Notes under the pieces: model-generated
Told to the model about the DNA's origin: nothing
Database searches by the model: none
Seen by the model: only the letters and a program-made list of their open reading frames with translations
Part shown: positions 1,523-31,559 of the stretch, one piece after another
How the letters are laid out: every line of letters begins with the position of its first letter
How positions within the stretch are numbered: position 1 is the first letter of the stretch
Translations under genes and position numbers: made by a program
Source of the DNA: Ranitomeya imitator
Taxonomy: Eukaryota
Assembly (NCBI RefSeq): GCF_032444005.1
Contig: NC_091286.1
Coordinates: 621,984,001-622,048,000 of the forward strand
DNA length: 64,000 nt
Reading direction: 5' to 3'

Positions 1523-1925
1523 ATACCTGACTCCGATACCTGACTCCGATACCTGACTCCGATACCTGACTCCGATACCTGACTCCGATACCTGACTCCG
1601 ATACCTGACTCCGATACCTGACTCCGATACCTGACTCCGATACCTGACTCCGATACCTGACTCCGATACCTGACTCCGATACCTGACTCCGATACCTGAC
1701 TCCGATACCTGACTCCGATACCTGACTCCGATACCTGACTCCGATACCTGACTCCGATACCTGACTCCGATACCTGACTCCGATACCTGACTCCGATACC
1801 TGACTCCGATACCTGACTCCGATACCTGACTCCGATACCTGACTCCGATACCTGACTCCGATACCTGACTCCGATACCTGACTCCGATACCTGACTCCGA
1901 TACCTGACTCCGATACCTGACTCTG
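1523..1925 (+). repeat. Minisatellite (ATACCTGACTCCG) x31
   Basis: Perfect 13-bp period; only the last unit differs (CTCTG). Confidence 0.95.
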
Positions 1926-2098
1926 AAAAAACGGCTCCGGCGTAAAAAAAGGATCAGGCAGAAAAAAAACGGAGTCGGCAGACAAAAACGGATCCGGCGG
2001 ACAAAAACAGATCCGGAAAAAAAAAAACGGATCCGGCCGACAAAAACGGATCCGGCAGAAAAATAAAACAGATCCGGCGGGAAAAAAACGGATCCTGC
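1926..2098 (+). repeat. Degenerate ~20-bp tandem repeat AAAAACGGATCCGGC
   Basis: About 8 imperfect units centred on the palindrome CGGATCCG. Confidence 0.8.
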
Positions 2099-6037: not shown

Positions 6038-6361
6038 GGCCACGTGCACACGCTGCGGATTACTCTGCTGATTTTTCCGGACTGATTTTGGTAAATCCGC
6101 AGGTAATCCCCACTATGGATTTCACCTGCGGTTTTACACCTGCGGATTCAAATAATGGAGCAGGTGTAAACCGCTGCGGAATCCGCACAAAGAATTGACA
6201 TGCTGTGAAATAAACACTACGTTTCCGCGCGGCATGTGCACTGTGGATTTTGTTTTCCATAGGTTTACATGGTACTGTAAACTCAGGGAAAACTGCTGCG
6301 AATCAACAGTGGCCAATCCGCTGAGGATCCGCAGCAAAATCCGCAGCGTGTGCACATACCC
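6038..6361. mobile_element. PIF/Harbinger-type MITE (GTGCACACG family)
   Basis: TIRs GGCCACGTGCACACGCTGCGGAT and ATCCGCAGCGTGTGCACATACCC; TAA TSD. Confidence 0.85.
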
Positions 6362-6741
6362 TAACAGTGATCGACAGGCTGCATTACCTAGAAATAATTT
6401 TTTTTTTTTAAGTACCGTAATATTCTTTTTTTTTTTTTTTTTACTAACACTTTTCTGGGATATAGAAATCTCTCTATATGCCAGCATATTGTTGGTAACA
6501 AAAAGCTGAAAAGTAAAAATCAGGAATAAAAAAAAAAAAAAAAAAAAAAAAAACACACTATGGAAAAATAATTAATTACAGTAAATCACATTTTTGCAAT
6601 AAACTTTTTCAATAATTGTCATATTTGGCTTCCAAGTAACAACGCATGCATGCCAGTGAAGGAATTATTTATGGTGACTAGTAAATGGTGTGGTTGATTT
6701 TTTTTTTTCCCATGGTCAAAAATGGCAGGATTGTTTTTTAA

Positions 6742-7502
6742 GGCTGTGTGCACACATTGCGGATTAGGCTTAGGAATTTCTGGTGCGGATTCTGCCTCTC
6801 CTGGCAGAAAACGCACCTGCGGATTTGTCGCGTTTTTTGGTGCGGTTCTGCAGCGTTTTTGCTGCGGTTTTCTTGCGGATTTGCTGTGGTTTTTACCCTT
6901 GCGGTTTTCTATAATGGAATGGGTACAAAAACGCTGCAGATCCACAAAAAAAGTGACATGCTACTTCTTTTAAACCGCAGCGGCTTTTCCGCAAAGTGTG
7001 CGCAGCATTTTTTTTTCTCATTGATTTACATTGTACTGTAAGGCTATGTGCACACGTTGCAGATTCTCTGCGGATCCGCAGCGTTTTTGAGTTGCAGGAA
7101 GGCTGCAGATCTGCAATTGATTTACAGTACAATGTAAATTAATGAGAAAGAAAAAAAAAAATGCTCTGCACACGTTGCGGAAAATCCGCTGCGGTTTAAA
7201 AGAAGTAGCATGTCACTTCTTTTTTGTGAATCTGCAGCGTTTTTGTACCCATTCCATTATAGAAAACAGCAGGGGTAAAAACCACAGCAAATCCGCAAGA
7301 AAACCGCAGCAAAAAACGCACAAAAAACGCGACAAATCTGCAGCTGCGTTTTCTGCCAGGAGAGGCAGAATCCGCACCAGAAATTCCTAAGCCTAATCTG
7401 CAACGTGTGCACATAGCCTAAATCAATTGCGGATCTGCAGCGTTTCTGCACCTCAAAAAACGCTGCGGATCCGCAGAGAATCTGCAACGTGTGCACATAC
7501 CC
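6742..7502. mobile_element. Harbinger-type MITE interrupted by an inverted copy of itself
   Basis: Outer TIRs GGCTGTGTGCACAC (6742) and GTGTGCACATACCC (to 7502); removing 7042-7418 and one TAA restores a single copy. Confidence 0.85.
7042..7418. mobile_element. Nested Harbinger-type MITE, same family, opposite orientation
   Basis: TIRs GGCTATGTGCACACGTTGCAGATT and AATCTGCAACGTGTGCACATAGCC; TAA at 7039-7041 and 7419-7421. Confidence 0.9.
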
Positions 7503-9147
7503 TTACTGCTCGTCTCAGGGGGGGATAAAGGAAAAAAAAAAACCTCACATCCCGATGCTTACATGAAAATAGTAAAGTTATGGATTTTATGGCTATGAAT
7601 GTGGAAATGTAAAAAAAAAAAAAAAAAAAAAAAAACAAAAACAGGCCGTTGGACCAGATTTGTGAAACCAATTTTCATCAGAATTCTGTTGTAAATTACT
7701 TTGAAAAGTTGGAAAATTACCGCCAATTGGGTAAAAATTTAGCTTTTTTTGGCATCTTCATACCAGTTTCTTCCAGCACTGCAAAAATGGGCAGAGAGCT
7801 GGGGCGGGACGGCGCTCAACATCACAGCTCATCTACTTCATGATGATCTGTGGCGTTCGCTACAACAGAAATCTCACTCCAGTCCCTGACCGGAGTAAGA
7901 TTTATGGAGTGGCACTCGAAGGCTTTTTCTGATTCAAGAAGAGGAGTGAAAATCGCCGGTCTTGTTGGATCAGGGTCATGAGGTGTTTTTTTTTTTTGGT
8001 GTGCTTTGGTGTAGAATATATTTATGCCACTTTTACATATGTGTAATGTACATGTGTATTTTATACGGCGTGAATGAGCAGAAGGGGAACAACGAGAATA
8101 AGGAACATAGATAAACGATCTGTCAATGTCGGCCCCTGGCCACAAACAGATTCTCTCACTTCTACATCTCAGTTAATCCTTGATGTTCAGGATCTCCTGG
8201 AATCTATACCTCGGGGTTTAGTGCCCAAATGCTATAAGAAAAATATGATTATATTCATTCCCTAGATCCGGCCAGACACCATTTACTTGCATTATGGATC
8301 ATAAACCCGATATGACCTTACAATTTACACTCACAATTATTAGTAGACACCAAAGCACGAACATGAAGAATCCTGCCCCAGTCAAACCTGTCAGACTGCT
8401 TACCTCGCAGGGTGGACACCTGGCACCGCGCATACAGAAATATGTCAAGATAAGACATGATGTAAAAGGCACAATCAATCTACAGTAAAATATGTGGTCT
8501 AAAATGGCGGTGAATAGAAAAAAAAAAAAAAAAAACACGTGAATAAAATGAAAACTAAAGGAAATCTATCTCCGGCTCGCTGCTACACCATCTGAGATCA
8601 GGATGATGTAGGGGCAGAGCTCCTAATTCCAGTGCTATGTGTCACTTATTGGGCTATTCGCTGTAGTTTTGATTGCAAAAAGAAAAAAAATTACTGTTTC
8701 TGTGTACACTGTGCATAAGCAGAAGGTGTCACACCCAAAACACTTAACACCACTTTTGCATATGAACAAATAATTTCTCAGGAATGCAGCAGCAGATAGA
8801 AGATATAATGGTGTCTATGGATTTATATTATTAAGACCTGCATACCCATATTTGCAATATGTGGGGTTTATCTTACTGACAGATTCCTTTTTAAGACCTT
8901 TTGGCCACCCTCATTGATTTGCTATATACAGTGGGGCAAAAAAGTATTTAAATCGGTCAGCAATAGTGCAAGTTCCACCACTTAAAAAGATGAGAGGCGT
9001 CTGTAATTTATATCATAGGTAGACCTCAACTATGGGAGACAAACTGAGAAAAAAAAAAATCCAGAAAATCACATTGTCTGTTTTTTTAACATTTTATTTG
9101 CATATTATGGTGGAAAATAAGTATTTGGTCAGAAACAAAATTTCATC

Positions 9148-10170
9148 TCAATACTTTGTAATATATCCTTTGTTGGCAATGACAGAGGTCAAACGTTTTC
9201 TGTAAGTCTTCACAAGGTTGCCACACACTGTTGTTGGTATGTTGGCCCATTCCTCCATGCAGATCTCCTCTAGAGCAGTGATGTTTTTGGCTTTTCGCTT
9301 GGCAACACGGACTTTCAACTCCCTCCAAAGGTTTTCTATAGGGTTGAGATCTGGAGACTGGCTAGGCCACTCCAGGACCTTGAAATGCTTCTTACGAAGC
9401 CACTCCTTCGTTGCCCTGGCGGTGTGCTTTGGATCATTGTCATGTTGAAAGACCCAGCCACGTTTCATCTTCAATGCCCTTGCTGATGGAAGGAGGTTTG
9501 CACTCAAAATCTCACGATACATGGCCCCATTCATTCTTTCATGTACCCGGATCAGTCGTCCTGGCCCCTTTGCAGAGAAACAGCCCCAAAGCATGATGTT
9601 TCCACCACCATGCTTTACAGTAGGTATGGTGTTTGATGGATGCAACTCAGTATTCTTTATCCTCCAAACACGACAAGTTGTGTTTCTACCAAACAGTTCC
9701 AGTTTGGTTTCATCAGACCATAGGACATTCTCCCAAAACTCCTCTGGATCATCCAAATGCTCTCTAGCAAGCTTCAGACGGGCCCGGACATGTACTGGCT
9801 TAAGCAGTGGGACACGTCTGGCACTGCAGGATCTGAGTCCATGGTGACGTAGTGTGTTACTTATGGTAGGCCTTGTTACATTGGTCCCAGCTCTCTGCAG
9901 TTCATTCACTAGGTCCCCCCGCGTGGTTCTGGGATTTTTGCTCACCGTTCTTGTGATCATTCTGACCCCACGGGGTGGGATTTTGCGTGGAGCCCCAGAT
10001 CGAGGGAGATTATCAGTGGTCTTGTATGTCTTCCATTTTCTAATTATTGCTCCCACTGTTGATTTCTTCACTCCAAGCTGGTTGGCTATTGCAGATTCAG
10101 TCTTCCCAGCCTGGTGCAGGGCTACAATTTTGTTTCTGGTGTCCTTTGACAGCTCTTTGGTCTTCACCAT
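9148..10170 (-). CDS. Intact Tc1-like DD34E transposase, 340 aa
   Basis: Paired-like HTH N-terminus, GAPRK AT-hook-like motif, [20 protein letters not shown] and [11 protein letters not shown] with 34 residues between the second D and the E; no stops. Confidence 0.95.
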
Positions 10171-10285
10171 AGTGGAGTTTGGAGTCAGACTGTTTGAGGG
10201 TGTGCACAGGTGTCTTTTTATACTGATAACAAGTTTAAACAGGTGCCATTACTACAGGTAATGAGTGGAGGAAAGAGGAGACTAA

Positions 10286-10443
10286 GGGCCCCTTTCCACT
10301 TGCGAGGAAAACGGACGAGTGCAATCCGATAAAAAAAAAATCGGATTGCACTCGGACCAATGTTAATCAATAGGTGACATTCCATTTGCGATTTTTTTTC
10401 TCAGCCGAAATCTGACTGAGAAAAATCTGTGTCGGCTGAGAAG

Positions 10444-10480
<37 letters not shown>

Positions 10481-10656
10481 GCAGCATGCTGCGTATTGCT
10501 GCGATTCTCGCCAATGCAAGTCAATGGGTGCGAGAAAAAAAACGCACAGCACTCGCACCATGCGAGTGCTGACCGATTTTTACGCACCCGTGTCCTTAGA
10601 AAAGCCGGCAATTCAGCGTAGAGTACAGTAAAATCACACTGACAGGTTAGATTAGA

Positions 10657-10745
<89 letters not shown>

Positions 10746-11621
10746 AGTACAGCGTGAGATTGAATTACCAGCTTTAAAGCTATTACCGGCTTTTGCTATC
10801 TCCTTCACAAACCCGACATGATATGAGACATGGCTTACATACAGTAAACCATCTCATATCACCTTTTTTTTGCATATTCCACACTACTAATGTCAGTAGT
10901 GTGTATGTGCAAAATTTGGCCGTTCTAGCTAGTAAAATAAGGGGTTAAATGGCGGAAAAAATTGGCGTGGGCTCCCGCACAGTTTTCTCCGCCAGAGTAG
11001 TAAAGCCAGTGACTGAGGGCAGATATTAATAGCCTGGAGAGGGTCCACGGTTATTGGCCCCCCCCCCTGGCTAAAAATATCTGCCCCCAGCCACCCCAGA
11101 AAAGGCACATCTGGAAGATGCGCCTATTCTGGCATTTGGCCACTCTCTTCCCATTCCCGTGTAGCGGTGGGATATGGGGTAATGAAGGGTTAATGTCACC
11201 TTGCTATTGTAAGGTGACATTAAGCCTAATTAATAATGGAGAGGCGTCAATTATGACACCTATACATTATTAATCCAATACTAGTAAGGAAGGAGAAAGC
11301 AAAAGCCGGTAATTGAATTACCAGCTTTAAAGCCATCTTACGCTGCATTAAATAATATATATATATACCTATTCTATGTGTATATATCTACTCTAATCTA
11401 ACCTGTCAGTGTGATTTTACTGTACTCTGCACTGAATTGCCGGCTTTTCTAAGGACAGGGGTGCGTAAAAATCAGACAGCAATACGGATGTCATACGGAT
11501 GTTGCGATAAAAAACTCACATCACACTCGCATGACACTCGCATGGCACTCGCAGACGTTACATCAGTTTTTTCGGTCCGTAAATCGGACCGTTTTTTTCT
11601 CACACAAGTGGAAAGGGGCCC
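10286..11621. mobile_element. Harbinger-type non-autonomous element inserted in the Tc1 5' region
   Basis: TIRs GGGCCCCTTTCCACTTG and CAAGTGGAAAGGGGCCC flanked by TAA/TTA; long imperfect inverted arms; the central module resembles 54890-55400 in reverse. Confidence 0.8.
10660..10742. repeat. (TA)n microsatellite
   Basis: About 41 uninterrupted TA units. Confidence 0.95.
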
Positions 11622-13568
11622 TTAAAGAAGAAGTTACAGGTCTGTGAGAGCCAGAAATCTTGATTGTTTGTTTCTGACCAAATACTTATTTTCCATCATA
11701 ATATGCAAATAAAATGTTAAAAAAACAGACAATGTGATTTTCTGGATGTTTTTTTCTCAGTTTGTCTCCCATAGTTGAGGTCTACCTATGATGTAAATTA
11801 CAGACGCCTCTCATCTTTTTAAGTGGTGGAACTTGCACTATTGCTGACTGACTAAATACTTTTTTGCCCCACTGTAGGTCCTGTGGAGGCCCAAGAAAGA
11901 CAGTCTTAATTCTAGAGTCTTACCGTCTCACGAAACTTCGTACTTAACCCCATACCAACATTGGATTACTGGGGCGTCCAAATTTCAGCAACCTGGTTTT
12001 AATACAGGCTCAGGAGCTGAGCCTGTATATTTGCTGCGTTATTCAGCCATCATCTGCCTCTAACAGCTGTGTAAGTTTATCAAAACTACAGCAAACAGCC
12101 CAGTAAGTGAAACATTACTGGAATCAGGGTCTCTGACAAAAACCTGGTGACAGATTCACTTAAAGGCCCCCATGCACAATAGATTAAGGTCGACCAATGC
12201 AGACGATATTGAGGGGTTCGGCTGACAGTCTAATGTGTATGGGGGTCCATTGGCATTGACTTTTAGGATTGCTACAACCAATAGGTGGCGCTAGAGATCA
12301 ACTCCACGTCCTTATGAAGAGAATATTCGTGTTGTGCCATTTTATTTGTTCATCTATCATTAGTGTCTTTTTAGTATGTTTGTTTTGGGTTTTCCATTCT
12401 TTCTACTACTTTCCCAGCAGTTCTTTGTCTCTTCTCTCACACAATTACAGGTGAGGAGAGGCAAAGAACTGTGTGAGCGCAGGGCAGCACATGTACAGTG
12501 TACTCAATTCAGTACTGTGGATCCAGGCTCTAATCTCTATCAATGCCTATACAGAACACAGAAGTTGGGTTAAGTTTGTCATCAGCTGCTGCGCTCTGTA
12601 TAGGCAGCAATTTAGTTATCAAAACTCAATATAATTAAGTGAGATTTTTCTTTTCAGTCTCTGCTTGTACAGAGCACAGCAACCGATGACGACACTCATC
12701 TCAACTTCTACACTCTGCATAGGCAGCAACTGAGATCGTAGAGCCTGAGCAACAAAATTATATGTTTTTACACACTTTCCAACCCTAGATAACGTAGGGA
12801 GATATGGTTTAGATTCGTGCAGACGAGCATATAAATCAGACGTGTGCCGACTTCAGTGGAAAGGTTTTAAATACTATGAATCTATGCCAGATAGTAGTGA
12901 TCATGAGGTGGACATCTCTCCGGATAACTAAGAGCTGAGAGAAGGGAGCAATACAGCGGATTGCAGCCAACTACAAAGCAAATGGACAGAAAAAGGACCT
13001 CAGGTTTAAATTCAGTGTCTTATTTTTCACCTGTAGGTTCTGGAACACCGACGTGTCACCTGCGTTCTGCTTGTTCATCTGGTGATCGGCATCATGAAAC
13101 GAATGTTCCTAAGGCCTCATTCACACTTCCGTGTTTAAACACAAACTTAAGTAAAGGGTACTGGTGTAATATCAGTGCACGGTCTGTGTCCGTTTTTTAC
13201 CATCAGTCATCAGTGAATAAAGAAAGAAAAAGAAATATCAGTCACTGATACTAAGCAAAAAGTGGTACAAAACCTGAGACTGAAGTGCTTTGGAAAGTGT
13301 CTAACTTCTCATTATCCAGTGATCACACGTACAGTTACACAGATATTCAATATGGTCTCAGAAGAAATCCACGGATAATGAGGGATGTAAACAATTTACA
13401 CGGTTCCCCTGGCTGCACGCTTAAATAATTCACATGCATCTGTTATCATACACCCACACATGTACTCTGACATCAGGGAGCTGGTCACTACACTCGTTAT
13501 GATCAATGCTACAAATTATTACAGAATACAGGGTCCGGGGGTGCATTTAATTAAGAGACAGGCTATGT

Positions 13569-13763
13569 CAGGGGTGTCAAACTGCATTCCTCGAGGGCTG
13601 CAAACAGGTCATGTTTTCAGGATTTCCTTGTACTGCACAGGTGATAATTTAATCACTAACTCATTATTTGTGTAGGTGATTAAATTATCACCTGTGCACT
13701 ACAAGGAAATCCTGAAAACATGACCTGTTTGCACCCCTCGAGGAATGCAGTTTGACACCCCTG
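13569..13763. mobile_element. hAT-type palindromic MITE
   Basis: CAGGGGTGTCAAACTGCATTCC...GGAATGCAGTTTGACACCCCTG; perfect 8-bp TSD GGCTATGT; same family as 42407-42589. Confidence 0.92.
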
Positions 13764-13789
13764 GGCTATGTAGCTGAGGGGCCTGTATG

Positions 13790-14420
13790 GCAGAAAATAC
13801 CCCAAAGTGACACCACTTTAAAATATTCACCTCTCAAAGTGCTCAAAACCACATTCAATAAGTATATTAACCCTTTAGGTGCATTACAGGAATTAAAACA
13901 ATGTGGAAGCAAAATATGAAAATTTTACTTTTTCCTCCCCCTAAAAGAAAAAATAATAAATAAAAAAAAGACACAAAAACAAAAAAAAAAATGTTGCTTT
14001 AGCCCCATCATTTTCACAAGGGTAACAGGAGAAAATGCACCATAACATTTGTTGTGCAGTTTCTCCTTAGTATGCTGATATCCGATATGTGGTGGAAAAC
14101 TACTGTTTAGGCACACTGCTAGGCTCGGAAAGGACTTCAAGTGACTTTAGAATTGAAAAATTGGCTGGAATAGATAGTGGAAGCCATGTCGGGTTTGGAG
14201 AGCCCCTGGTGTGCCTAAACAGTGGAAATCCCCAAGAGGTTAACCGATTTTGGAAACTACACCCCTCAAGGAATGTATCTAGATGTGTGGTTAGCACCTT
14301 GAACCCACAGGTGCTTCACAGAATTTTATAACATTGAGCCATGAAAATGGAAAAATACATTTTCCCAAAAGTGTTTTTTTTTTTAGTCCCAAATTGTTAA
14401 TTTTCACAAAGTAACAGGAG
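13790..14420 (-). repeat. Older diverged copy of the ~390-bp-unit piggyBac-type repeat; continues at about 22989-24022 and 33936-34210
   Basis: Reverse complement of the unit motif CTGTGAAGCAC...TCTAGAT...GTTTCCAAAA seen in 31560-33480; the sequence rejoins across the DIRS and piggyBac-type insertions. Confidence 0.65.
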
Positions 14421-14777: not shown

Positions 14778-15982
14778 TCACCTGGGTGGGATTACCGTAC
14801 TAAGGACGGCTCTCCCGAATGCCAAGTCAGATGTAGAAGACAGATCAAGTCTATAATGTTTATAGAAAGTCGAAGGCGACGACCAGGTTGCGGCCTTACA
14901 TATAAGCTCGATGGAGAGGTCTTTATTCTCCGCCCACGAGGATGACACAGCCTGAGCTGAATGTGCTTTCACTCTGTCTGGAGGATCTTTGCCTTTTGAC
15001 GAGTATGCAAGATGGATAGCCTCCCTGATCCAACGGGACAAGGTAGCTTTCGTGACACCGTGGCCTTTTCGGTGACCCTGAAAAGATACAAACAGAGCCC
15101 TACTCTGTCTGCAGGACTGAGTTCTCTCTATGTAGCTTAGGACTGCTCTTTCTACGTCCAACATATGTAGCTTCTCTTCTTCCTGATTTAGTGGATTATC
15201 GAAAAAGGAAGGTAAGAAAATTTCCTGAGATCTATGGTATTTTGTCGCTACTTTAAGGAGATATGATGGATCTGGTTTGAGAACCACCCTGTCCCGATAT
15301 GTCATTAAGAATGGAGGGTCTATGGAGAGGGCTTGGATGTCTCCTACTCGTCTGGCCGATGTTAAGGCTATCAATAAAGCTACCTTGTATGTGACATTTT
15401 TTAGAGGGATAGAATCTAAGGGCTCAAAGGGAGGTCCAGTTAAGGCGTCTAGAACTAGATTCAAGTCCCAGGGTGGTAGACGTGGGACATGAACCGGAGT
15501 ACATCGTTCACATGCCCTAACAAATCTTGCTATCCATCTATTACCCGCTACGTTAGCACTATAGAGGGCTCCTAGGGCAGATACTTGAACTCTCAAGGTA
15601 TTAACAGATAAACCCATCTCATGACCTTTTTGTAAAAATTCAAGGATGGCTCTAATAGGAACCTTGTTAGAGAAGGGTTCCGTATGAAAGTTGAGAAATT
15701 TCCTCCATACTCTGCTGTATATTAGAGTCGTGGATCTATTCCTACTTAACAGTAAAGTACTAATCAGTTCTTGTGAGAACCCTCTTAATGTTAGAATCTG
15801 CCTCTCACGTTCCACGCCGTGAGGTGGAGGCCCTTCACTTGTGGGTGGTAGAATGGACCCCGAGACAGTAGGTCTGGTGTCATTGGCAGAATCCAGGGAT
15901 CGCAGACTGACATCGCTTGAAGACAGGAGAACCAGGGCCTCTTTGGCCAAAAAGGTGCTATCAATATTACTCTCGCTTTCTC
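14778..15982 (-). pseudogene. DIRS tyrosine recombinase, open frame but catalytic HxxR reads HSAQ
   Basis: PWDLNLVL, LIALTSARRVGDIQAL, AHSAQ (expected HSTR), AATW and FYKHY motifs. The first 35 aa of the ORF call lie in the BEL LTR. Confidence 0.85.
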
Positions 15983-16510
15983 TGTTCTGTCCCCACATGA
16001 GGCGAATGAAGGTGTCGCAGACTAATAAGAGTTGTGAGAGAGATAATCGTACCTTCGCATTTCCTCGATATGAGGCAGACAGGACCAATGCTGCTCAGCG
16101 TCCAGAGAGATGATGCACTCCAGGGATTGTGTAATCCAGACTTGTTTATTTTGTTGATCTGGACATACAGCGTATAACTGGTAATACAGAACTTCTCCAG
16201 AAATGCAGGGTAGACAGGGTACAGTAAGATGTAGCACCAAGTGTGTTTGCAAGTGTGAGCAGCATGAGAGAGTGATCGAAAGACTGATGCCTTCCTAAGC
16301 CCAGTTCAAAAGCACGTCCTCTCACAACAGAAAGTAAACTGTAAATGGCTGCCAGAGGAAGAGAAGATTTGACCCCTGAACCGGATGTAAGACATGCCCA
16401 CAAGAAATACATGAAAAACAAGCTGCCATACAGAAAAAGGCCATTGGGTGGCAGCAGAGTAAAATATAACAACATACATGGAAACTGAGGAATATACATG
16501 GAACAGCACA
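15983..16510 (-). repeat. BEL/Pao 3' LTR
   Basis: Differs from 18805-19332 at two positions I could find (T16247/C19069, T16342/G19164). Confidence 0.92.
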
Positions 16511-16754
16511 CTCCCCGTCTGAAATTCCGAAAGGGATTTCACTATATCAATGTCCTTAAAAAGTCCAACAACCTAGAAAGTGAAACCAAACATGCATGTA
16601 ATGCAATAATAACTTTAAACAAGACATTAAGTCAGTTCCTGAGATAATCCAATGGAAAACCCATCTTCGGATCAGAGAAGCCGCACTAGGCCAAACTATC
16701 TCTGACCCACTGTAATCCAATGGACAAATAGTAGTGCAGTGTTCTGTTCATAGT

Positions 16755-18466
16755 TTATCCTACCAGAATGTCCTCGATAGTGAGTATTTTTTGGCAGACG
16801 TGCCAACCATGACAGTCTTTGTCTCCATGTGGCTTGTGATAAGATCTCGCAATGTGGACTAACCTTGCAATAGTCTTAATGAGTTTCATCCAATTGGAGA
16901 AGCGTTTGAAGCGCTGACAACCAAGGGTGGAGGTTCGTTTAGCGTTCGTGGCCAGAGCACTGACCTCGGAGCGGACTTCTGGATCATCGTCCGGATCCTG
17001 GATGCTGAAGAATTCCTGAACACATTCACTTCCCTTCTGTTCCAGCAGAAACTTTGGACCTGAAAGCCAAGAAGAGTTAGCAAAGGAATTTATAGACATA
17101 GGTCTAGTGGCATGGTCGGCTGGATTAAGTTCAGATGGGATATAGTGCCACTGTTCAGGTTTGGAAGACCTTCTTATGCTCTCAATGCGGTTACTGACGT
17201 ACACGTAGAAGTGCCTTGTTTGGTTGTAGATGTAACCTAAGACAACTTTACTGTCACTGTAGTATTGTACGTCATCTATGTGAGTGTCCAGCTCATGCTG
17301 AATAAAGTCTGCGAGTTCTACTGCAAGCACAGCCCCACAGAGTTCCAGCCTGGGAATAGTGTGGTCAGGCTTGGGAGCCAACTTAGCTTTGCCGAAAACG
17401 AACCCAACACGATCTTGATTGTCAGATCCCGTTACCTTCAGGTAGACAACAGCTGCAATGGCCTCCGTGGATGCATCCGAGAACACATGGAGTTCCATCC
17501 TGGTGCTAGCAGCAAGTGAGATTCCAGCGTAGCATCTCGTTATATGGATTTTATCCAAGGCACACAAAGACTGCTTCCAGGTTTCCCATTTTGGTTCCTT
17601 ATCAGGAGGTAGAGGGGTATCCCAGTCCTTGACAGTTTCGGACAGCTGTCTCAGAAGGGATTTACCTTGTATGGTAATTGGTGCTACGAATCCCAGTGGG
17701 TCATATAGGCTATTTACCACTGACAGGACACCACGTTGAGTGAATGGTTTGTCTGCACAGTTGATTTGGAATCCGAAGGTGTCGGCTGACAGGTTCCACC
17801 TCAGGCCTAAGCTTCTCTGCACAGGCGGACGGTCTGGTCCCAGGTCTATGTCCTTGAATCCAGGTGCGTGGTCGCTTGACTCAAAGGCTCTCATGACAGC
17901 TGGGCTGTTTGAGGCAATTTTGTGCAGTCTAAGCTTAGCTCGGTACAGCATATGTTGGGTCCTTTTGAGTAGGTCGATTGCAGCTTCTTCTGTAGGTAGA
18001 GATTTTAGTCCATCATCTACGTAGAAGTCTTTCTCTACAAAGTCTCTGGCGTCTGTTCCATACTCGGACTCTCCTTCTTGTGCGGTTCTCCGCAGGCCAT
18101 ATGTTGCCACAGCGGGTGAAGGGCTGTTCCCGAATACGTGCACCCGCATGCGATACTCCACCATCTCTTTGCTGGGGTCATTGTACCACAGGAACCTGAG
18201 GAAATTCCTGTGGTCCTCTCGGACTATGAAACAGTGGAACATCTGTTCAATGTCGGCGGTGATGGCAATGGGCTCTTTCCTGAACCTCATCAACACTCCT
18301 ACTAGGTTGTTTGTCAGATTAGGACCTGTGAGGAGGACATCATTGAGAGATACGCCTTGATGTTTGGCGCTTGAATCAAAGACAACTCTAATTTGTTTAG
18401 GTTTCTTCGGGTGATATACTCCAAATGAGGGTAGGTACCAGCACTCCTCGTTTTCCTTTAAGGGGG
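16755..18466 (-). pseudogene. BEL/Pao pol fragment (RT and RNase H/peptidase A17-like region)
   Basis: WYLPSFGVYHPKKPKQIRVVFDSSAK (in frame upstream of the called ORF), ADIEQMFH, HVFGNSPSP, FYVDDG, LHVFSDAS, TIPRLELCGA, NPADHATR; stops before the integrase. Confidence 0.9.
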
Positions 18467-18804
18467 AACTGCGTAAGGTCCTTTTCGGCCATTTTGATTT
18501 AAGGTGCGCTGTCCCTTTAAGAAACTGAACCTTTGAATTGGGGGCTGGAGATTGCGGTGCAGCTTAGTTGCGACCCCCTGATAAGATTCCCAAGGTGTTG
18601 TTGGAGAATTGTGGGGTTCTGCGGTCCGACGATCTGCAGCAGTGTGGTATAATACACAGAGTCTTTATGTACAATGCAGTCTGAGGTGATGCTGCAGGAG
18701 ATTTCTTAGCAGAGCAGGGCTGCAGTATGTGAGCGGGCAGAGAGCGGGCACGTGAATAGTGATACAAGGGTGATTCTGGCCGGGCTTCAAGGCAGTCTTT
18801 CGAC

Positions 18805-19332
18805 TGTTCTGTCCCCACATGAGGCGAATGAAGGTGTCGCAGACTAATAAGAGTTGTGAGAGAGATAATCGTACCTTCGCATTTCCTCGATATGAGGCAG
18901 ACAGGACCAATGCTGCTCAGCGTCCAGAGAGATGATGCACTCCAGGGATTGTGTAATCCAGACTTGTTTATTTTGTTGATCTGGACATACAGCGTATAAC
19001 TGGTAATACAGAACTTCTCCAGAAATGCAGGGTAGACAGGGTACAGTAAGATGTAGCACCAAGTGTGTCTGCAAGTGTGAGCAGCATGAGAGAGTGATCG
19101 AAAGACTGATGCCTTCCTAAGCCCAGTTCAAAAGCACGTCCTCTCACAACAGAAAGTAAACTGGAAATGGCTGCCAGAGGAAGAGAAGATTTGACCCCTG
19201 AACCGGATGTAAGACATGCCCACAAGAAATACATGAAAAACAAGCTGCCATACAGAAAAAGGCCATTGGGTGGCAGCAGAGTAAAATATAACAACATACA
19301 TGGAAACTGAGGAATATACATGGAACAGCACA
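18805..19332 (-). repeat. BEL/Pao 5' LTR
   Basis: Followed on the minus strand by G then TCGAAAGACTG; no TGG-starting tRNA PBS. Confidence 0.92.
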
Positions 19333-19337
19333 TTCTC

Positions 19338-21000
19338 TTCCCTTATCTTTTTGATGACTAATGGGATTAGCATCATTGGTGGGAAAGCATATGCCAGATT
19401 GTAGTTCCACGGATACTGGAGCGAGTCTATCATGTCTGGATTGTCTGCCACATTCAAGGAAGCGAATGCTCGTACCTGTCTGTTGTTCCTGGTTGCAAAT
19501 AAATCTATCTGCGGAAGACCCCACATGTCCACTATGTTTTTGAATATCTGAGGGTTGAGGGTCCATTCTCCCTGACGTAGCGTGTGGCGACTTAGAAAGT
19601 CGGCCCTTGTATTTTCTATACCTCTGATGTGGAGAGCTGTGAGTGATAGAAAATTGAGCTCTGCTAAGTCGAAGATGTTTGCCGCTGAAGACAGACTTTT
19701 TGATCGAGTTCCGCCTTGATGATTTAAATAAGCGACGACCGTCGTGTTGTCTGACAGGATTTTGATATGAGATCCTCGGAGCTGGGGAAGGAAAAAATTT
19801 AAGGCATAATGAACCGCGTTCAACTCTTTCCAGTTGGAGGACTGCTGGATCTCTGATGAATTCCAGCGACCTTGAGCTACATACTTATCCAGATGGGCCC
19901 CCCACCCTTCTGGTCCTGCGTCAGTAGTGACTAATTTAGATGGTGTTATTGACCATGAGACTCCCCTGGACAAATGTGACTCCAGCACATCTTTAGATAG
20001 AGTAATTTTCATATTTAAATGACAGCGAGATTGCGCATGGAGTGTCTGGTGCTGTAGGGCTCTGGTATGGTATTGAGCCCATTGTACGGCAGGAATGCAG
20101 GAGGAAAGTGAGCCCAAGAGAGACATGGCATCTCTAAGGGACATTTGAGGTTTTGCCCTTGCCATAGAGATTTTTGAAATTGTTAATTTTTTGGGTTCTG
20201 GTAAAAAGCATTTTTGACTTACAGAGTCCAAAACTAGTCCTAGGAAGGACTGACGGGTTTCCGGATGTAGTCTGGACTTTTTGAAGTTCACTATCCAACC
20301 CAAAGCCTGTAACAATGAAATAGCATTAGTCAATCGCTCTTTACACTGAGAGGCTGAATTTCCAATTATTAAAAAATAATCTAGATAAGGTACAATTAGC
20401 GTCTCCTGATGACGCAAATAAGCCATCACCTCGAGCATAACTTTTGTAAAAACCCGAGGAGCCATGGACAGGCCGAACGGCATGGCTGTAAATTGAAAGT
20501 GACGGATTCGGCCTTGTAGGACTACCGCCACTCTGAGGTACTGTTGATGCTCCGCATAAATGGGAAGATGGTAGTACGCATCCTTTAAATCTAGACCTGC
20601 CATAAAGCATCTAGGAAACAAAAGTTTAATCGTAGATCTTATTGATTCCATTTTAAACGTATGATTGTACAGAAAAGGAATTTAGTCTTTTTAGATTAAT
20701 TATAGTACGAAAAGTACCGTCTGGTTTTGGAACCAGAAATAAAGGGGAATAAAACCCCCTCCCTTCCTGATTTTTTGGTACTTTTACGAGAACATTCTTA
20801 GCCAAAAGGCTCAGAATTTCTAGTTGAAGCGCTTTTTGCTGTTCCGGCGCTTTCAGTGATGTGATAATGAAAGTATCCTGCGGGAATTTGAAGAATTCTA
20901 ATTTTAATCCGGATTTTATTAGGCGGAGAATCCACTGATTTGAAGTTACAAGTTTCCATTGATGGTAAAAAAAAAAAACTTCAGTCTTCCACCCACCGGA
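19338..21000 (-). pseudogene. DIRS RT-RNase H-methyltransferase-like ORF (frameshifted, YLDD changed to YLDY, split by BEL)
   Basis: PVGGRLK, FYSPLFLVPKPDG, DLKDAYYH, PFGLSMAPRVFTK, YLDY (20376-20378), TTDAG, DLFAT, YAFPP; frameshift near 20660-20690; the MT domain continues below 15978. Confidence 0.9.
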
Positions 21001-21006
21001 ATTTCA

Positions 21007-22555
21007 TCATTGATGGTATCTGCCACGTTTAGATGTTTCGGGATTACCGAATAAGGCACCTTTCGGTTTCTCCTTCGTCTCCTTCGTTTCCCAACGCTCT
21101 TTGCGGCTCGTACGGCCTTCTCCTATTAAATGGCCGTCTCCTAAACGCTCTCCTATAAGAAGGAAGAAACTGTTTAGGGAATCCCTTCCTTCTTTCTCCT
21201 GCTTTATTAAGGAGATCATCAAGAACCTTCCCAAACAGGAACTCACCCTGGCACGGGATTGTACATAATCTTGATTTAGATTATGCATCACCTTTCCACC
21301 CCTTTAACCAAAGGGCACGCCGGGCTGCATTGACAAGGCCCGCTGATCTTGCTGCCAGCCGCAAGGAGTCCACTGAAGCATCTGTTAAGAATGCTGTAGC
21401 GCTCTTAATTAAAGGAATTGCTTGCAAGATCTTTTCTCTTGCCACTTTACCCTTAAATTTGCTGCTCCATCTGGTCAATCCATACCAATAGTGACCTAGC
21501 TGTGCAATTACCCGATATGGCGGGTTTAAAGGCCCCTGTGTTTGTCTCCCATGACCTTTTAAGAAGAGCTTCAGTCTTGCGGTCCAATGGGTCGAGTAAG
21601 ATTCCTGCATCCTCCACAGGGAGGGACGATTGTTTTAAGGTGGATGCCACTGCTGCGTCCACTTTTGGCACCTTGGACCAGATCTCTAACTCTTCATCAC
21701 TGAAGGGGTAACGCCTCTTTGAAGAGGAGGGAAGGAACCCTTTCCCCCGCTTGTCCCATTCTCTTTTTACAAGATCTTTCACGGCGGAGACCACTGGGAA
21801 AGTTCGCCGTTTTTTGTGACCTAGGTCCGCGAACATAATCTCCTGGGCCGATTTAACCCCCTTAGTGCCTGGACAACCCATGGTATTCCTTACTGATTTA
21901 ATAAGGTTATTTATGCTGTCCAGCAGAACACATGCTCCGCTCTCATCCTCAGAAGAACCAGATGATGATTCCGAGGTGTTAGAGGACCGGATTAACCCCT
22001 CTTCTGACTCCGAACTAGAAGGAAGGGGACGGCTTTTACTCCCATGTTTTTTCTGGGATTTCGATCCTAGAGACTGAATCTCTTGTCTAATTATGGCTCT
22101 GATGTTAGTGGTGGTAACTGCAGCCTCATCCTTTAGGGTTTGCTGTATGAAATCTTGACACAACCTCTTTGGATATGAATCCGGCAAGGCTTGTATACAC
22201 AGGGCACATTCTTTATGTTTTGTTTTACTGGTCCTTTTAGCCTATGGGGAGAGGGTAGAGAAGGAAGGGATCAGCTTATAGGTAGAGGATTAAATACACT
22301 CACCCAGTGAAGCATTCATTGTACCGGTCTTGGCGGAGGGGACGCTGTGCAGCTTCTAAGTAGATCCGATTCTCTACTCCTTCTTACATGAGTGTCAGAC
22401 TCCATAACAGGGCGACCACTCTTCTTTCCTGCTGTGGACTTAGCGGCTTTAGCGCTGGTGTCTTTTCCAGCGCTCACCTGCTCCACCGCTGGTGGATGCT
22501 CCTCATGGGTTGGGGACGACATTCCGAGCACAATCGCTCTGTGTCCCGGCTCCAT
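21007..22555 (-). pseudogene. DIRS ORF1 (gag-like, LAP2alpha-C-like), frameshifted, probably spliced
   Basis: N-terminal CALC...LC motif, serine-rich linker, KVDAAV, and DASVDSLRLAAR...ARRALWLKGW, typical of vertebrate DIRS ORF1; spread over 3 frames. Confidence 0.75.
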
Positions 22556-23389
22556 TTTAACAGGGCGGTGATCTCCGCGCTCCAGGCCGCGAACCGGAAG
22601 TGCTTTCACTACTTCCGGTTCAAGCAGGGCCGAGCGCACTTACCCGGAGACGCTGCCGCCGTCGGCCTCCTCACGCTCCTGCGTCCTCCTCACCAAAGGC
22701 CGTGAACGCATTCAGACGAGGGGGGAGGCTGGATACAGTGGCTCCCCCGACGCTGCTACTGACACCGCAGCCCCTGCCGCTCACCAGGAGACCGAACAGG
22801 CGGGTGCATGGGTCAGGTATGATGGAGGTGCTCCAACCACCTCGTGCTGCAGGTTATCCAGGGATTTCCGATAGGAACAGGAAACCAACTGAGGAGGAGA
22901 GGGGGGACCGCCCTTTTATCTCTGTAGGTTTCTTGTTCCTATGGGCGGATCCCTCTCATTGTGGGTGCTGTCGTGGCGAAGGGTAAAATGAACCACAATT
23001 TGTTGTGCAATATCTCATGAGTAATATCTCAATGCGGTCAGAAACTCTTTGTTGAGCACACGGCAGGGCTTGGAAGAGAAGGAGAACCATTTGATTTTTT
23101 TTAACGTAAAATTCTCTGGAATAGAATGCAGACATGATGTCACATTTGGAGAGCTGCCAAGGTTCCCAAAACAGCAGAAACCCCCACATGTGACCCAATT
23201 TTGGAAACTACCTAGAATTCTTCTTGAGGTATAGGGAGCATTTTAAACCCACTGGTATTTTACATAATTGTATAAACACTGGGCTGTGAAAATGAAAAGT
23301 TCCATTTTTCCACTGGAATGTTGTTTTAGTCCTAAGTTTTTAAATTTCAAAAGGGCCAATAGGAGAAAATGGACCACAAAATTTGAAAC

Positions 23390-25864: not shown

Positions 25865-28800
25865 TGTTGTGAATTCTGTGGCTGAGTTCACTTCTGTGGT
25901 CACAAGTGGTATTGCAGTCTCTGGGCTTCCTCCCTCAGGTGTTTTGGTGAGCTCGTTGGCTGCCTTGCTATTTAGCTCCACCTGAGTCTGTCTTCCTTGC
26001 TCCTTGTCAATGTTCCAGTGTTGGATCTGAGCTACTGCATCTTTCCTTGGGCCTGCTGCTCTGCTAGATAAGTGCTTCTAGTTTGTTTTCTGTTTTTTCT
26101 GTCCAGCTTGCTATTAACTTTTGCTGGAAGCTCTGAGAAGCAAAGGGGTGCACCGCCGTGCTGTTAGTTCGGCACGGTGGGTCTTTTTGCCCCTTTGCGT
26201 GGTTTTCGTTTTAGGGTTTTTGTAGACTGCATAGTTCTCTTTGCTATCCTCGCTCTGTCTAGAATATCGGGCCTCACTTTGCTGAATCTATTTCATTCCT
26301 ACGTTTGTCTTTTCATCTTGCTAACAGTCATTATATGTGAGGGGCTGCCTATTCCTTTGGGGTATTTCTCTGAGGTAAGTCAGGCTTGTATTTCTATCTT
26401 CAGGCTAGTCAGCTCCTCAGGCAGTGCCGAGTTGCATAGGTAGTTGATAGGCGCAATCCACTGCTGCTTATAGTTGTGTGAGGATAGATCAGGTACTGCA
26501 GTCTACAGAGATTCCACGTCTCAGAGCTCGTCCTATTGTTTTTGGTTATTGCCAGATCTCTGTATGTGCGCTGATTACTGCACGCTGTGTTGCCTGATTG
26601 CCAGCCATAACAGTACAAGGAGCCACACCAATGATTCCCAATAGAGGGAAAAAAGAAATCCTGACATCATTTTTTTTTCTTAGCTCTGTCTTCAGTCTTT
26701 TTTTTCCCCTAGACATTAGAGTGCTTCAGGACACAGCTGTGGACATGGATATTCAGGCTCTGTGCTCCTCAATGGATAATCTCGTTGTAAATGTACAAAA
26801 GATTCAAGATACTATTGATCAGAAATCGATGCTAGAACCAAGAATTCCGATTCCTGATTTGTTTTTTGGTGACAGAACTAAGTTCCTGAGCTTCAGAAAT
26901 AATTGTAAGCTATTTTTGGCCTTGAAACCTCATTCTTCTGGTAATCCTATTCAACAGGTTTTGATTATTATTTCTTTTTTGCGCGGCGACCCACAGGACT
27001 GGGCGTTTTCTCTTGCACCAGGAGATTCTGCATTGAGTAATGTTGATGCATTTTTCCAGGCGCTGGGATTGCTTTACGATGAGCCTAATTCAGTGGATCA
27101 AGCTGAGAAAAATCTGCTGGCTTTATGCCAGGGTCAGGATGATGTAGAAGTATATTGTCAGAAATTTAGGAAATGGTCAGTACTCACTCTGTGGAATGAA
27201 TCTGCACTAGCGGCTTTGTTCAGAAAGGGTCTCTCTGAAGCTCTTAAGGATGTAATGGTGGGATTTCCTATGCCTGCTGGTTTGAATGAGTCTATGTCCT
27301 TGGCCATTCAGATCGGTCGTCGCTTGCGCGAGCGTAAATCTGTGCACCATCTGGCGGTATTGTCTGAGAGTAAGCCTGAGCCTATGCAGTGCGACAGGAC
27401 TATGACTAAAGTAGAACGGCACGAACACAGACGTCTGAACAGACTGTGTTTCTATTGTGGTGATTCTACTCATGCTATTTCTAATTGTCCTAAACGCACT
27501 AGGCGGTTCGATAGCTCTGCCGTTATTGGTACTGTACAGTCCAAATTCCTTTTGTCCATTACCTTAATGTGCTCTTTGTCATCATATTCTGTCATGGCGT
27601 TTGTGGATTCAGGCGCTGCCCTGAATCTGATGGATTTGGATTATGCTAAACGTTGTGGATTTTTCTTGGAGCCTTTGCGGTGTCCTATTCCGTTGAGAGG
27701 AATTGATGCTACACCTTTGGCCAAGAATAAGCCTCAGTACTGGGCCCAGCTGACCATGTGCATGGCTCCTGCACATCAGGAAGTTATTCGCTTTTTGGTA
27801 CTGCATAATTTGCATGATGTGGTCGTGTTGGGGTTGCCATGGCTACAAACCCATAATCCAGTATTGGATTGGAACTCTATGTCGGTAACCAGCTGGGGTT
27901 GTCAGGGAGTACATGGTGATGTTCCATTTTTGTCTATTTCGTCATCCATTCCTTCTGACATCCCAGAGTTCTTGTCGGACTTTCAGGATGTATTTGAAGA
28001 GTCCAAGTCTGATGCCCTACCTCCGCATAGGAATTGTGATTGTGCTATCGATTTGATTCCTGGTAGTAAATTCCCTAAGGGTCGTTTATTTAATTTGTCC
28101 GTACCTGAACACACCGCTATGCGCAGTTATGTGAAGGAGTCCCTGGAGAAGGGACATATTCGCCCATCGTCGTCACCATTGGGATCAGGGTTCTTTTTTG
28201 TAGCCAAGAAGGATGGTTCGCTAAGACCGTGTATTGATTACCGCCTTCTTAATAAGATCACTGTTAAGTTTCAGTATCCCTTGCCATTGATTTCTGACTT
28301 GTTTGCTCGGATTAAGGGGGCTAGTTGGTTTACTAAGATTGATCTTCGTGGTGCGTATAATCTGGTGAGAATCAGGCAGGGAGATGAATGGAAAACGGCA
28401 TTTAATACGCCCGAGGGTCATTTTGAGTATCTGGTGATGCCGTTCGGACTTGCCAATGCTCCATCTGTTTTTCAGTCTTTTATGCATGACATTTTCCGTG
28501 AGTATCTGGATAAATTCTTGATTGTTTACTTGGATGACATTTTGATCTTCTCAGATGATTGGGAGTCTCATGTGAAGCAAGTCAGAATGGTTTTCCAGGT
28601 ACTGCGTGCTAATTCCTTGTTCGTGAAGGGATCAAAGTGTCTCTTCGGTGTGCAGAAAGTTTCATTTTTGGGGTTCATCTTTTCCCCTTCTACTATCGAG
28701 ATGGATCCGGTTAAGGTTCAGGCCATCCAGGATTGGACTCAGCCGACATCTCTAAAAAGTCTGCAGAAATTCCTGGGCTTTGCTAATTTTTATCGTCGCT

Positions 28801-31553: not shown

Positions 31554-31559
31554 GCCACC

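What the first reader, a model, noticed from the sequence alone, without database searches (positions are those of the whole stretch)
18782..19133. BEL/Pao element with a Tf1-type self-priming signature instead of a tRNA PBS
Seen: on the sense (minus) strand the 5' LTR ends ...GAACA, followed by one G and then TCGAAAGACTG (18803-18793). There is no TGG, so this is not a tRNA-3'-end PBS. The same strand of the LTR carries CAGTCTTTCGA (19108-19098), a perfect 11-bp complement, plus a G:U pair with the spacer G. That site lies 25 nt downstream of a weak TATA-like TTTTGAA (19133-19127). The match extends imperfectly upstream (CCTT and AAGCCC blocks, about 21 of 27 nt). Established: S. pombe Tf1 primes minus-strand synthesis with the first 11 nt of its own transcript, and this mechanism is associated with the Ty3/Gypsy Tf1/sushi group. 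Inference: this BEL/Pao lineage may self-prime, which would mean independent or wider use of tRNA-free priming. I do not know of this being described for BEL/Pao but cannot check the literature.
Basis: partly seen in the sequence, partly recalled or inferred. Interest (0 to 1): 0.85.

Follow-up and report, generated by a model that had tools for sequence, protein, structure and literature searches.

The report
Self-priming BEL/Pao retrotransposon lineage
A frog jumping gene of the BEL/Pao group, which textbooks say borrows a cellular tRNA to start copying itself, carries a start site that matches a short stretch of its own repeat, and this match co-varies in relatives from other frogs and a tick, so the lineage most likely primes itself.

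Summary
Right after the 5' LTR (19332..18805, minus strand) comes G, then TCGAAAGACTG (18803-18793). There is no TGG. The same LTR holds its exact complement CAGTCTTTCGA (19108-19098); about 8 in 10,000 shuffles do as well.

Four relatives fetched here have their own perfect 11-13-nt complement at the homologous LTR place, anchored on the LTR end. These are Dendropsophus, Leptodactylus, Xenopus laevis and the tick Ornithodoros. Six positions show double compensatory changes and none is broken. Each site lies upstream of the poly(A) signal.

This scan had already noted that form on other DNA of this genome (s1-288104); I confirmed it on independent loci.

Self-priming is therefore well supported (about 0.7). 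The strict Tf1 picture is not: the primer being the first 11 nt of the transcript, with a TATA 25 nt upstream. The pairing extends upstream of the site, and the site is homologous to an exon-exon junction, so transcription probably starts further upstream. No start-site data could be obtained.

The papers searched describe BEL/Pao as tRNA-primed. This is a new variant of a known mechanism.

The parts
19333..19337 (-). 5' target-site duplication GAGAA
   Evidence: the same 5 nt flank both ends of the element
18805..19332 (-). 5' LTR, 528 nt, TGTGCTG...CAGAACA
   Evidence: 2 differences from the 3' LTR
19109..19147 (-).
   Evidence: pairs with 18792..18759; best of all LTR windows; 15/1000 shuffles reach it
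19097..19108 (-). Candidate self-primer: CAGTCTTTCGA (19108-19098) plus T19097, which can wobble-pair with G18804
18967..18972 (-). AATAAA poly(A) signal, 126 nt downstream of the candidate primer's end (start to start 136 nt), so the primer segment can lie in R
18793..18804 (-). Primer-binding site: G + TCGAAAGACTG, directly after the LTR, no TGG
18759..18792 (-). Leader-side strand of the extended duplex (CCTT, AAGCCC and further blocks)
18465..18758 (-). Rest of the 5' leader, up to an internal deletion breakpoint at 18464/18465
   Evidence: pol homology starts at 18464; contigs of other copies diverge exactly there
16767..18464 (-). Remaining pol fragment (RT end, Pao 'Peptidase_A17' region, start of integrase); ORF 16755-18296. 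gag, protease, most of RT and the integrase end are missing, so this copy is non-autonomous
16511..16521 (-). Polypurine tract ...CAGACGGGGAG
   Evidence: kept with small variations in the eight relatives checked
15983..16510 (-). 3' LTR, carrying the second copy of the candidate primer at 16286-16276
15978..15982 (-). 3' target-site duplication GAGAA

Best explanation
This is a young, internally deleted copy of a BEL/Pao LTR retrotransposon in a poison-frog genome. Its lineage starts minus-strand DNA synthesis with a piece of its own RNA instead of a host tRNA. A segment of 11-12 nt in the transcribed part of the LTR (19108-19097) pairs with the site directly after U5 (18804-18793), closing a panhandle of about 300 nt over R-U5. 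Imperfect helices lengthen this duplex on its outer side. Inferred steps, by analogy with Tf1: the element's RNase H nicks the RNA at the 3' side of the paired segment; the new 3'-OH is extended through U5 and R; and the plus strand later copies the retained RNA primer. That copying would keep the PBS an exact complement of the segment and would explain both the sharp 11-13-nt limit and the compensatory changes. Shown here: the complementarity, its anchoring on the LTR end, its covariation in relatives, its position upstream of the poly(A) signal, and the absence of a tRNA-type PBS. Inferred: the cleavage, the priming itself, and the transcription start. The start most likely lies at least about 40 nt upstream of the segment, so the primer would be an internal part of the 5' exon rather than the first 11 nt as in Tf1.
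For: Complement in the window:
- It is exact, 11 nt plus a G:U pair, and 16 of 20,000 shuffles reach it.

Relatives with full LTR pairs and TSDs, each with its own perfect complement anchored on the first base after the LTR, at the homologous LTR place:
- L001 Dendropsophus: GTCAAAAGATG / CATCTTTTGAC.
- L006 Leptodactylus: GTCAAAACACA / TGTGTTTTGAC.
- L007 X. laevis: GTCAAAAAGAATA / TATTCTTTTTGAC.
- L008 tick: GTAAAAAGACTG / CAGTCTTTTTAC.

Covariation:
- Each PBS pairs 11-13 nt without interruption with its own site, and only 2-9 nt with the others' sites.
- 55 of 55 cells are paired over the first 11 positions.
- Double compensatory changes occur at positions 3, 4, 8, 9, 10 and 11.
- Only the true pairing, 1 of 120 permutations, reaches the own-pair sum.
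- With three spliced-site families added, 88 of 88 cells are paired, and 1 of 20,000 random pairings reaches the sum.

Other support:
- The poly(A) signal lies 43-136 nt downstream of the site's first base in all five families.
- Folding from the site to the PBS gives the terminal duplex pair probabilities mostly near 1 (0.54-1.00) in the three families folded. The fold of the window region has z = -5.3.
- There is no tRNA or other Rfam match in the element.
- The five families form one clade on a pol tree.
- A positive control sits in the same window: a Tf1/sushi-group chromovirus shows the expected 9-nt self-complement under the same test.
- The ICTV profile and a BEL/Pao case study describe tRNA priming for the family (PMC8742986, PMC4580426). 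Self-priming is established or predicted only for Tf1/sushi, Tcn1 and TAR elements (PMC6317226).
Against: - There are no data on the transcription start, on RNA cleavage or on cDNA intermediates. The public runs were available only as assembled contigs, which cannot show RNA ends.
- The host's tRNA set could not be searched. The window and most fetched loci hold no tRNA gene, so a host RNA primer is excluded only by argument: the PBS differs between families and follows each family's own LTR.
- The outer extension of the duplex is significant in the window and in L007, but weak in L001 and L006.
- One relative, L005, has older LTRs (95.6% alike) and shows neither a contiguous nor a spliced complement.
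- The window copy itself is deleted and cannot replicate on its own.
- If the primer is longer than 11-13 nt, what limits exact complementarity to 11-13 nt is unexplained.
Confidence: 0.7

Rival explanations
1. Strict Tf1 geometry. Transcription starts at or next to 19108, so the primer is literally the first 11 nt of the RNA. It folds back onto the PBS and is cut off between nt 11 and 12.
For: Exact complementarity stops sharply after 11-13 nt in every family. That is what copying a primer reaching only to the RNA's 5' end would give. TCAGTCT around 19107 fits the initiator consensus YYANWYY (the consensus is from my own knowledge). The length equals Tf1's 11 nt.
Against: The proposed TATA (TTTTGAA) is not conserved, and no family has a TATA at -30. 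The duplex continues upstream of the site in the window and L007, with compensatory changes between them in the GGGCTT/AAGCCC versus AGGTT/AACCT helix. In the sister clade the homologous 11 nt are 5 nt of an upstream exon plus 6 nt of the next, and a 5-nt first exon is not plausible. There the RNA must start well upstream, and by homology probably here too.
Confidence: 0.15
2. The PBS and leader pair mainly with the copy of the site at the 3' end of the genomic RNA (the U3-R junction of the 3' LTR, 16286-16276 and upstream), or with a second packaged RNA. That would circularise or dimerise the genome. The primer would be taken from there, or the pairing would serve strand transfer.
For: If transcription did start at the site, the upstream extension strands (19109-19147) would exist only in the 3' copy of the RNA. 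Yet they pair significantly with the leader. Ty3 and Ty1 use 5'-3' contacts during initiation (my own knowledge, not tested here).
Against: The extension is not needed if transcription starts upstream. It is weak in L001 and L006. There are no data separating cis from trans pairing.
Confidence: 0.12
3. The PBS is bound by a host RNA, such as an internal tRNA fragment as in copia. The LTR site would then be only a structural partner that masks or presents the PBS.
For: Half-tRNA primers without TGG are known in Ty1/copia lineages (PMC6317226). The host tRNA set could not be checked here.
Against: A fixed host RNA would hold the PBS constant. Instead eight families have eight different PBS sequences, each exactly matching its own LTR or LTR splice junction, in frogs and a tick. 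Exact Watson-Crick pairing of constant length, anchored on the LTR end, looks like primer copying rather than a mere stem. There is no tRNA-like match in the element.
Confidence: 0.05
4. Chance complementarity in one element.
For: A single 11-mer match has a probability of about 8 in 10,000, not zero.
Against: It recurs, with different sequences, at the homologous place in four further families.
Confidence: 0.01

Closest known systems
Tf1 of Schizosaccharomyces pombe and the Tf1/sushi group of Ty3/gypsy chromoviruses (self-primed reverse transcription)
   Same: No tRNA-type PBS. About 11 nt directly after the 5' LTR are exactly complementary to a segment of the element's own LTR upstream of the poly(A) signal. 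The fold-back encloses R-U5. The complement co-varies between families. A sushi-group element in this same window shows the signature (25865-31554).
   Different: It belongs to a different superfamily: BEL/Pao pol with the Peptidase_A17 region and DUF5641, and no chromodomain. The segment is probably not the extreme 5' end of the RNA. The duplex has outer imperfect helices. In the sister clade the primer sequence exists only after an intron is removed from the LTR. Cleavage by RNase H is not shown here.
Canonical BEL/Pao elements (Belpaoviridae, genus Semotivirus; e.g. Tas, Achilles)
   Same: The pol domains, LTRs with short inverted ends, a 5-bp TSD and a PPT next to the 3' LTR.
   Different: [quoted passage not shown] This lineage has no TGG and no such site.
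Predicted self-priming Ty1/copia TAR lineage (Houba, Osr-1) and Tcn1 chromoviruses of plants and fungi
   Same: They were inferred in the same way, from PBS-to-LTR complementarity without a tRNA match (PMC6317226). They show that self-priming occurs in more than one superfamily.
   Different: Different superfamilies and hosts. No splice-dependent form has been reported for them.
Splice-dependent BEL/Pao self-primer noted earlier by this scan (s1-288104, same genome, other DNA)
   Same: The same superfamily and a homologous LTR site. The complement is 11 nt and anchored on the LTR end. I confirmed it independently in Spea, X. laevis and a third genome.
   Different: In that form the complement is split 5+6 by an LTR intron of 202-247 nt. 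In the window's clade it is contiguous, as if the intron had been lost or never gained.

Membership tests
BEL/Pao LTR retrotransposons (Belpaoviridae) | Pol polyprotein of Pao type (Pfam Peptidase_A17 region between RT and integrase; DUF5641 after integrase) | tested here: met
   Window ORF 16755-18296: PF05380, E = 1.5e-47. The full-length relative L001 has DUF1759 gag (weak), PF05380, rve and DUF5641. The nearest proteins are frog BEL/Pao pol at 74-90% identity.
BEL/Pao LTR retrotransposons (Belpaoviridae) | LTRs with short inverted ends, a short target-site duplication, and a PPT before the 3' LTR | tested here: met
   528-nt LTRs, TGTGCTG...CAGAACA, TSD GAGAA, PPT GACGGGGAG.
BEL/Pao LTR retrotransposons (Belpaoviridae) | Complete gag-pol coding capacity | tested here: not met
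   Only residues 70-636 of the relative's second pol ORF are present. The copy is a deletion derivative. Contigs of other copies continue past the breakpoint at 18464/5.
BEL/Pao LTR retrotransposons (Belpaoviridae) | 18-nt PBS complementary to the 3' end of a host tRNA (ICTV description) | tested here: not met
   No TGG after the 5' LTR in the window or in any of the eight relatives. This is a descriptive trait of the family, not one used to delimit it.
Tf1-type self-priming (mechanism) | PBS next to the 5' LTR that matches no tRNA 3' end and is complementary to the element's own LTR RNA | tested here: met
   relatives.
Tf1-type self-priming (mechanism) | The complementary segment lies in the transcribed part of the LTR, upstream of the poly(A) site | tested here: inconclusive
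   AATAAA or ATTAAA lies 43-136 nt downstream of the segment in all five families, so that half is met. The start site itself was not measured.
Tf1-type self-priming (mechanism) | The segment is the first ~11 nt of the transcript | not testable with these tools
   Only contigs were available. Indirect evidence points against it.
Tf1-type self-priming (mechanism) | Primer and PBS change together (in Tf1, primer mutations are transferred to the PBS) | tested here: met
   Comparative equivalent: 88 of 88 paired cells over 11 positions in eight families, with seven positions showing two or more pair types.
Tf1-type self-priming (mechanism) | RNase H cut 3' of the paired segment creates the primer end | not testable with these tools
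   Needs biochemistry or cDNA-end mapping.
Tf1/sushi group (Ty3/gypsy chromoviruses) | Ty3/gypsy pol with chromodomain integrase | tested here: not met
   The pol is of Pao type. A true member lies elsewhere in the window.

The most novel reading that the evidence does not exclude
A whole branch of BEL/Pao elements, found in frogs, a tick and probably fish, has given up tRNA priming. It uses an 11-nt self-primer taken from inside its 5' leader. The primer exists in two interconvertible forms: one is contiguous in the LTR (this window), and the other is assembled only by splicing an intron out of the LTR (the sister clade). The contiguous form would then arise by reverse transcription of an RNA spliced in its 3' LTR. 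The constant 11-nt length would reflect a molecular ruler of the RT/RNase H rather than the position of the RNA's 5' end.
Probability: 0.4. Interest if true: 0.8.

Novelty: new variant of a known kind. Interest (0 to 1): 0.68.

Why it matters
Self-priming has been shown for Tf1 and inferred for a few Ty3/gypsy and Ty1/copia lineages. BEL/Pao, the third superfamily, is described by the ICTV as tRNA-primed. A BEL/Pao clade that primes itself would mean tRNA-free initiation occurs in all three LTR-retrotransposon superfamilies.

It also bears on annotation. Tools that require a tRNA PBS, such as LTRdigest-type filters, would miss or misfile these elements.

The contrast with Tf1 is informative as well. 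Here the segment is internal, the duplex is extended, and there is a spliced sister form. That gives a natural experiment on what fixes primer length and where RNase H cuts.

Tried and rejected
- tRNA genes: none in the window. One unrelated tRNA-Ala turned up in the nine fetched loci. The PBS could therefore not be compared with host tRNAs, and I did not type tRNA sequences from memory.
- Rfam on the element: no match at E up to 1.
- RNA evidence for the start site: both run searches returned only Logan contigs of uncertain kind. Laying four of them gave short unitigs that break at variant sites. They showed no joints and no usable ends.
- The bacterial-type promoter and terminator scan is irrelevant to this element.
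- The killifish locus L009 is broken by an assembly gap and was left alone.
- The TATA reading of TTTTGAA is rejected: it is not conserved and lies inside the paired stretch.
- At first, L002-L005 looked like relatives without any self-complement. That reading was dropped for L002-L004 once the spliced junction was tested. L005 remains unexplained.
- Other LTR-end-like motifs in the window (34086, 40751/40789) turned out to be unrelated sequence.
- Eight literature searches found no report of self-priming in BEL/Pao. Subscription-only papers, such as the original Suzu description, could not be read.

Full report
**What is in the window**

- The LTR ends ...GGGGACAGAACA at 18805.
- Then come G (18804) and TCGAAAGACTG (18803-18793), with no TGG.
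- CAGTCTTTCGA lies at 19108-19098. The pattern search finds only this site, its copy in the other LTR (16286-16276) and the PBS itself.

Repeat finding and alignment of the two repeat copies define the element.
- Two 528-nt LTRs lie at 19332..18805 and 16510..15983, with 2 differences between them.
- The LTR ends are TGTGCTG...CAGAACA, and a 5-bp duplication GAGAA flanks both sides.
- The polypurine tract GACGGGGAG abuts the 3' LTR.

Only about 2.3 kb lies between the LTRs. The one long ORF (16755-18296) carries the Pao-type PF05380 region. Comparison with a full-length relative shows that only residues 70-636 of the second pol ORF remain, at 18464..16767. The copy is therefore a young deletion derivative. 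Contigs from public runs of the same species diverge exactly at 18464/5, so longer copies exist.

The element is inserted in a DIRS-like element. The host is a poison frog: the nearest protein is from Ranitomeya imitator, at 88-90% identity.

**Is the complementarity more than chance?**

In 20,000 dinucleotide-preserving shuffles of the LTR, 16 gave a complement of 11 nt or more starting 0-3 nt after the LTR. Folding 19135..18770 pairs the two stretches and gives z = -5.3.

**Relatives**

A protein search with the pol fragment and look-ups of the encoding contigs gave eight further elements with both LTRs, a TSD and the same PPT. None has TGG after the 5' LTR.

Four of them carry, like the window, a perfect complement of the first 11-13 nt after the LTR inside their own LTR.

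| Locus | Host | PBS (coordinates) | LTR site (coordinates) |
|---|---|---|---|
| L001 | Dendropsophus ebraccatus | GTCAAAAGATG (6545-6555) | CATCTTTTGAC (6335-6345) |
| L006 | Leptodactylus fuscus | GTCAAAACACA (6375-6385) | TGTGTTTTGAC (6171-6181) |
| L007 | Xenopus laevis | GTCAAAAAGAATA (9672-9684) | TATTCTTTTTGAC (9468-9480) |
| L008 | tick Ornithodoros turicata | GTAAAAAGACTG (7169-7180) | CAGTCTTTTTAC (7016-7027) |

The sites sit in the same sequence context (..GGAA.GCAT | site | CGCAT..), at 45-65% of the LTR. A poly(A) signal follows 43-136 nt downstream of the site's first base.

**Covariation**

With the duplexes anchored on the LTR end, each PBS pairs 11-13 nt without interruption with its own site, but only 2-9 nt with the sites of the others.
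- All 55 cells of the first 11 positions are paired.
- Positions 3, 4, 8, 9, 10 and 11 show changes on both sides.
- Of 120 ways to assign sites to PBSs, only the true one reaches the observed sum.

These copies are young (LTRs at least 99% alike), so the pairing is being maintained. Exact Watson-Crick pairing of constant length, anchored on the LTR end, is what repeated copying of a retained RNA primer into the PBS would produce. It is more than a structural stem needs.

**A lead from the scan, tested here**

Four more distant relatives at first seemed to have no self-complement: L002 Spea, L003 X. laevis, and L004 and L005 from unnamed assemblies.

I searched for GT..AG splits and checked the letters. 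Three of the four families have a consensus donor and acceptor in the LTR.

| Locus | Exon end / intron / exon start | Intron length (nt) |
|---|---|---|
| L002 | CGCTG / GTAAGC...TTTTCTAG / TTTCAC | 234 |
| L003 | ATCTG / GTAAGA...CTTTATAG / TTTTAC | 247 |
| L004 | CGTCT / GTAAGT...CATTATAG / TTTCAC | 202 |

In each case, joining the exon ends gives an exact 11-nt complement of that family's own PBS, split 5+6. The PBSs are GTGAAACAGCG, GTAAAACAGAT and GTGAAAAGACG. L005, whose LTRs are only 95.6% alike, gave nothing.

Lined up, the spliced junctions and the contiguous sites are clearly homologous (..GCAT CGCTG TTTCAC CGCAC.. against ..GCAT CAGTC TTTCGA TCAC..). Over all eight families, 88 of 88 cells are paired, and 1 of 20,000 random pairings reaches the observed sum.

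On a pol tree, the contiguous-site families form one clade: frogs with 99% SH-aLRT support, joined by ticks and Bombina. The spliced-site families fall in the other clade.

**Where does the RNA start?**

This could not be measured.
- The TTTTGAA string has no counterpart in relatives.
- In the window and in L007 the duplex continues for 25-40 nt on the outer side. It is the best partner of the leader among all LTR windows, and 15 and 7 of 1000 shuffles reach it, respectively. One helix changes compensatorily between the two: GGGCTT/AAGCCC against AGGTT/AACCT. The extension is weak in L001 and L006. It is present in L004 (2/1000) and partly in L003.
- In the sister clade, five of the eleven primer bases belong to an upstream exon, which cannot be only five bases long.

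The most economical reading is that transcription starts at least about 40 nt upstream of 19108, and that the primer is an internal segment of the first part of R. An alternative keeps the start at the site and lets the leader pair with the U3-R junction at the 3' end of the RNA.

Either way, the sharp end of exact pairing after 11-13 nt still needs an explanation. In five of eight families a kept, bulged CAT stands just 5' of the perfect stretch.

**Rivals**

A host tRNA fragment cannot be excluded by direct comparison, because no host tRNA set was at hand. It would, however, hold the PBS constant, and the PBS differs in every family and follows its own LTR. Rfam finds nothing tRNA-like in the element. 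Chance is excluded by the relatives.

**Control**

The same window holds a complete Ty3/gypsy chromovirus of the Tf1/sushi group at 25865-31554, with SH3_Tf2-1 and Chromo domains. That group's self-priming is established. The same test finds its 9-nt self-complement: ACAAGGAGC after the LTR against GCTCCTTGT at LTR position 135-143.

**Comparison with what is known**

[quoted passage not shown] The BEL/Pao element Achilles has a tRNA-Tyr PBS (PMC4580426). The large BEL/Pao survey does not treat the PBS at all (PMC3118150).

Self-priming is described for Tf1/sushi and predicted for Tcn1 and for the copia TAR lineage (PMC6317226). Eight searches found no report for BEL/Pao, though subscription papers could not be searched.

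**Verdict**

The specific Tf1 geometry is doubtful. The feature is a new variant of a known mechanism. The scan had already met its splice-dependent sister form on other DNA of this genome.

Noticed in passing
window 25865-31554 (+): Complete-looking Ty3/gypsy chromovirus of the Tf1/sushi group. It has a 1442-aa ORF at 26598-30926 with RT, RNase H, integrase, SH3_Tf2-1 and Chromo domains. The LTRs are 749 nt and 99.7% alike, and the TSD is CCACC. There is no TGG. ACAAGGAGC, 1-2 nt after the 5' LTR, is the exact complement of GCTCCTTGT at LTR position 135-143, which is the expected self-primer of this group.
   Followed up: partly
L002:6884-7117, L003:6596-6842, L004:6737-6938: In three BEL/Pao families of the sister clade, the LTR holds a GTAAG...YAG intron of 202-247 nt. 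Only the joined exon ends (5+6 nt) give an exact 11-nt complement of the family's own PBS.
   Followed up: yes
L008 (Ornithodoros turicata CM073696.1) 6770-14103: A tick BEL/Pao element with 99% identical LTRs groups beside the frog clade on the pol tree and is about 60% identical in protein. That is closer than some frog families, so horizontal transfer between ticks and amphibians is possible.
   Followed up: no
window 19338-22700 and 14778-15977 (-): The BEL/Pao copy is inserted into a DIRS-like element. Its RT/RNase H ORF (19128-20651) runs into the LTR, and LAP2alpha-like gag ORFs lie at 21281-22187. A 436-aa ORF below the insertion (14778-16088) has no Pfam match.
   Followed up: no
window 18802 (loose ends): Contigs from four runs share the last 34 nt of the LTR but continue ...CAGAACA GTCAAATTGTCTTTCAGCC. 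This is a related family with another PBS. Its LTR could not be seen, so its self-complement is untested.
   Followed up: no
window 19109-19111 and the homologous places in L001-L004: A CAT directly 5' of the perfect 11-mer is kept in five of eight families. It is bulged in the predicted duplex and may mark the limit of the primer.
   Followed up: no
L005:7309-7889: This relative has older LTRs (95.6% alike) and the PBS-like sequence GTGAAAAAGCATC. It has neither a contiguous nor a GT..AG-spliced complement in its LTR.
   Followed up: partly
window 1432-2003; 31593-33333; 40745-40805: Three repeats: a tandem array of 13-nt units, a satellite with a period of about 390 nt, and a short perfect palindrome (GGACGTACTATTCCGTCC ... 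GGACGGAATAGTACGTCC).
   Followed up: no
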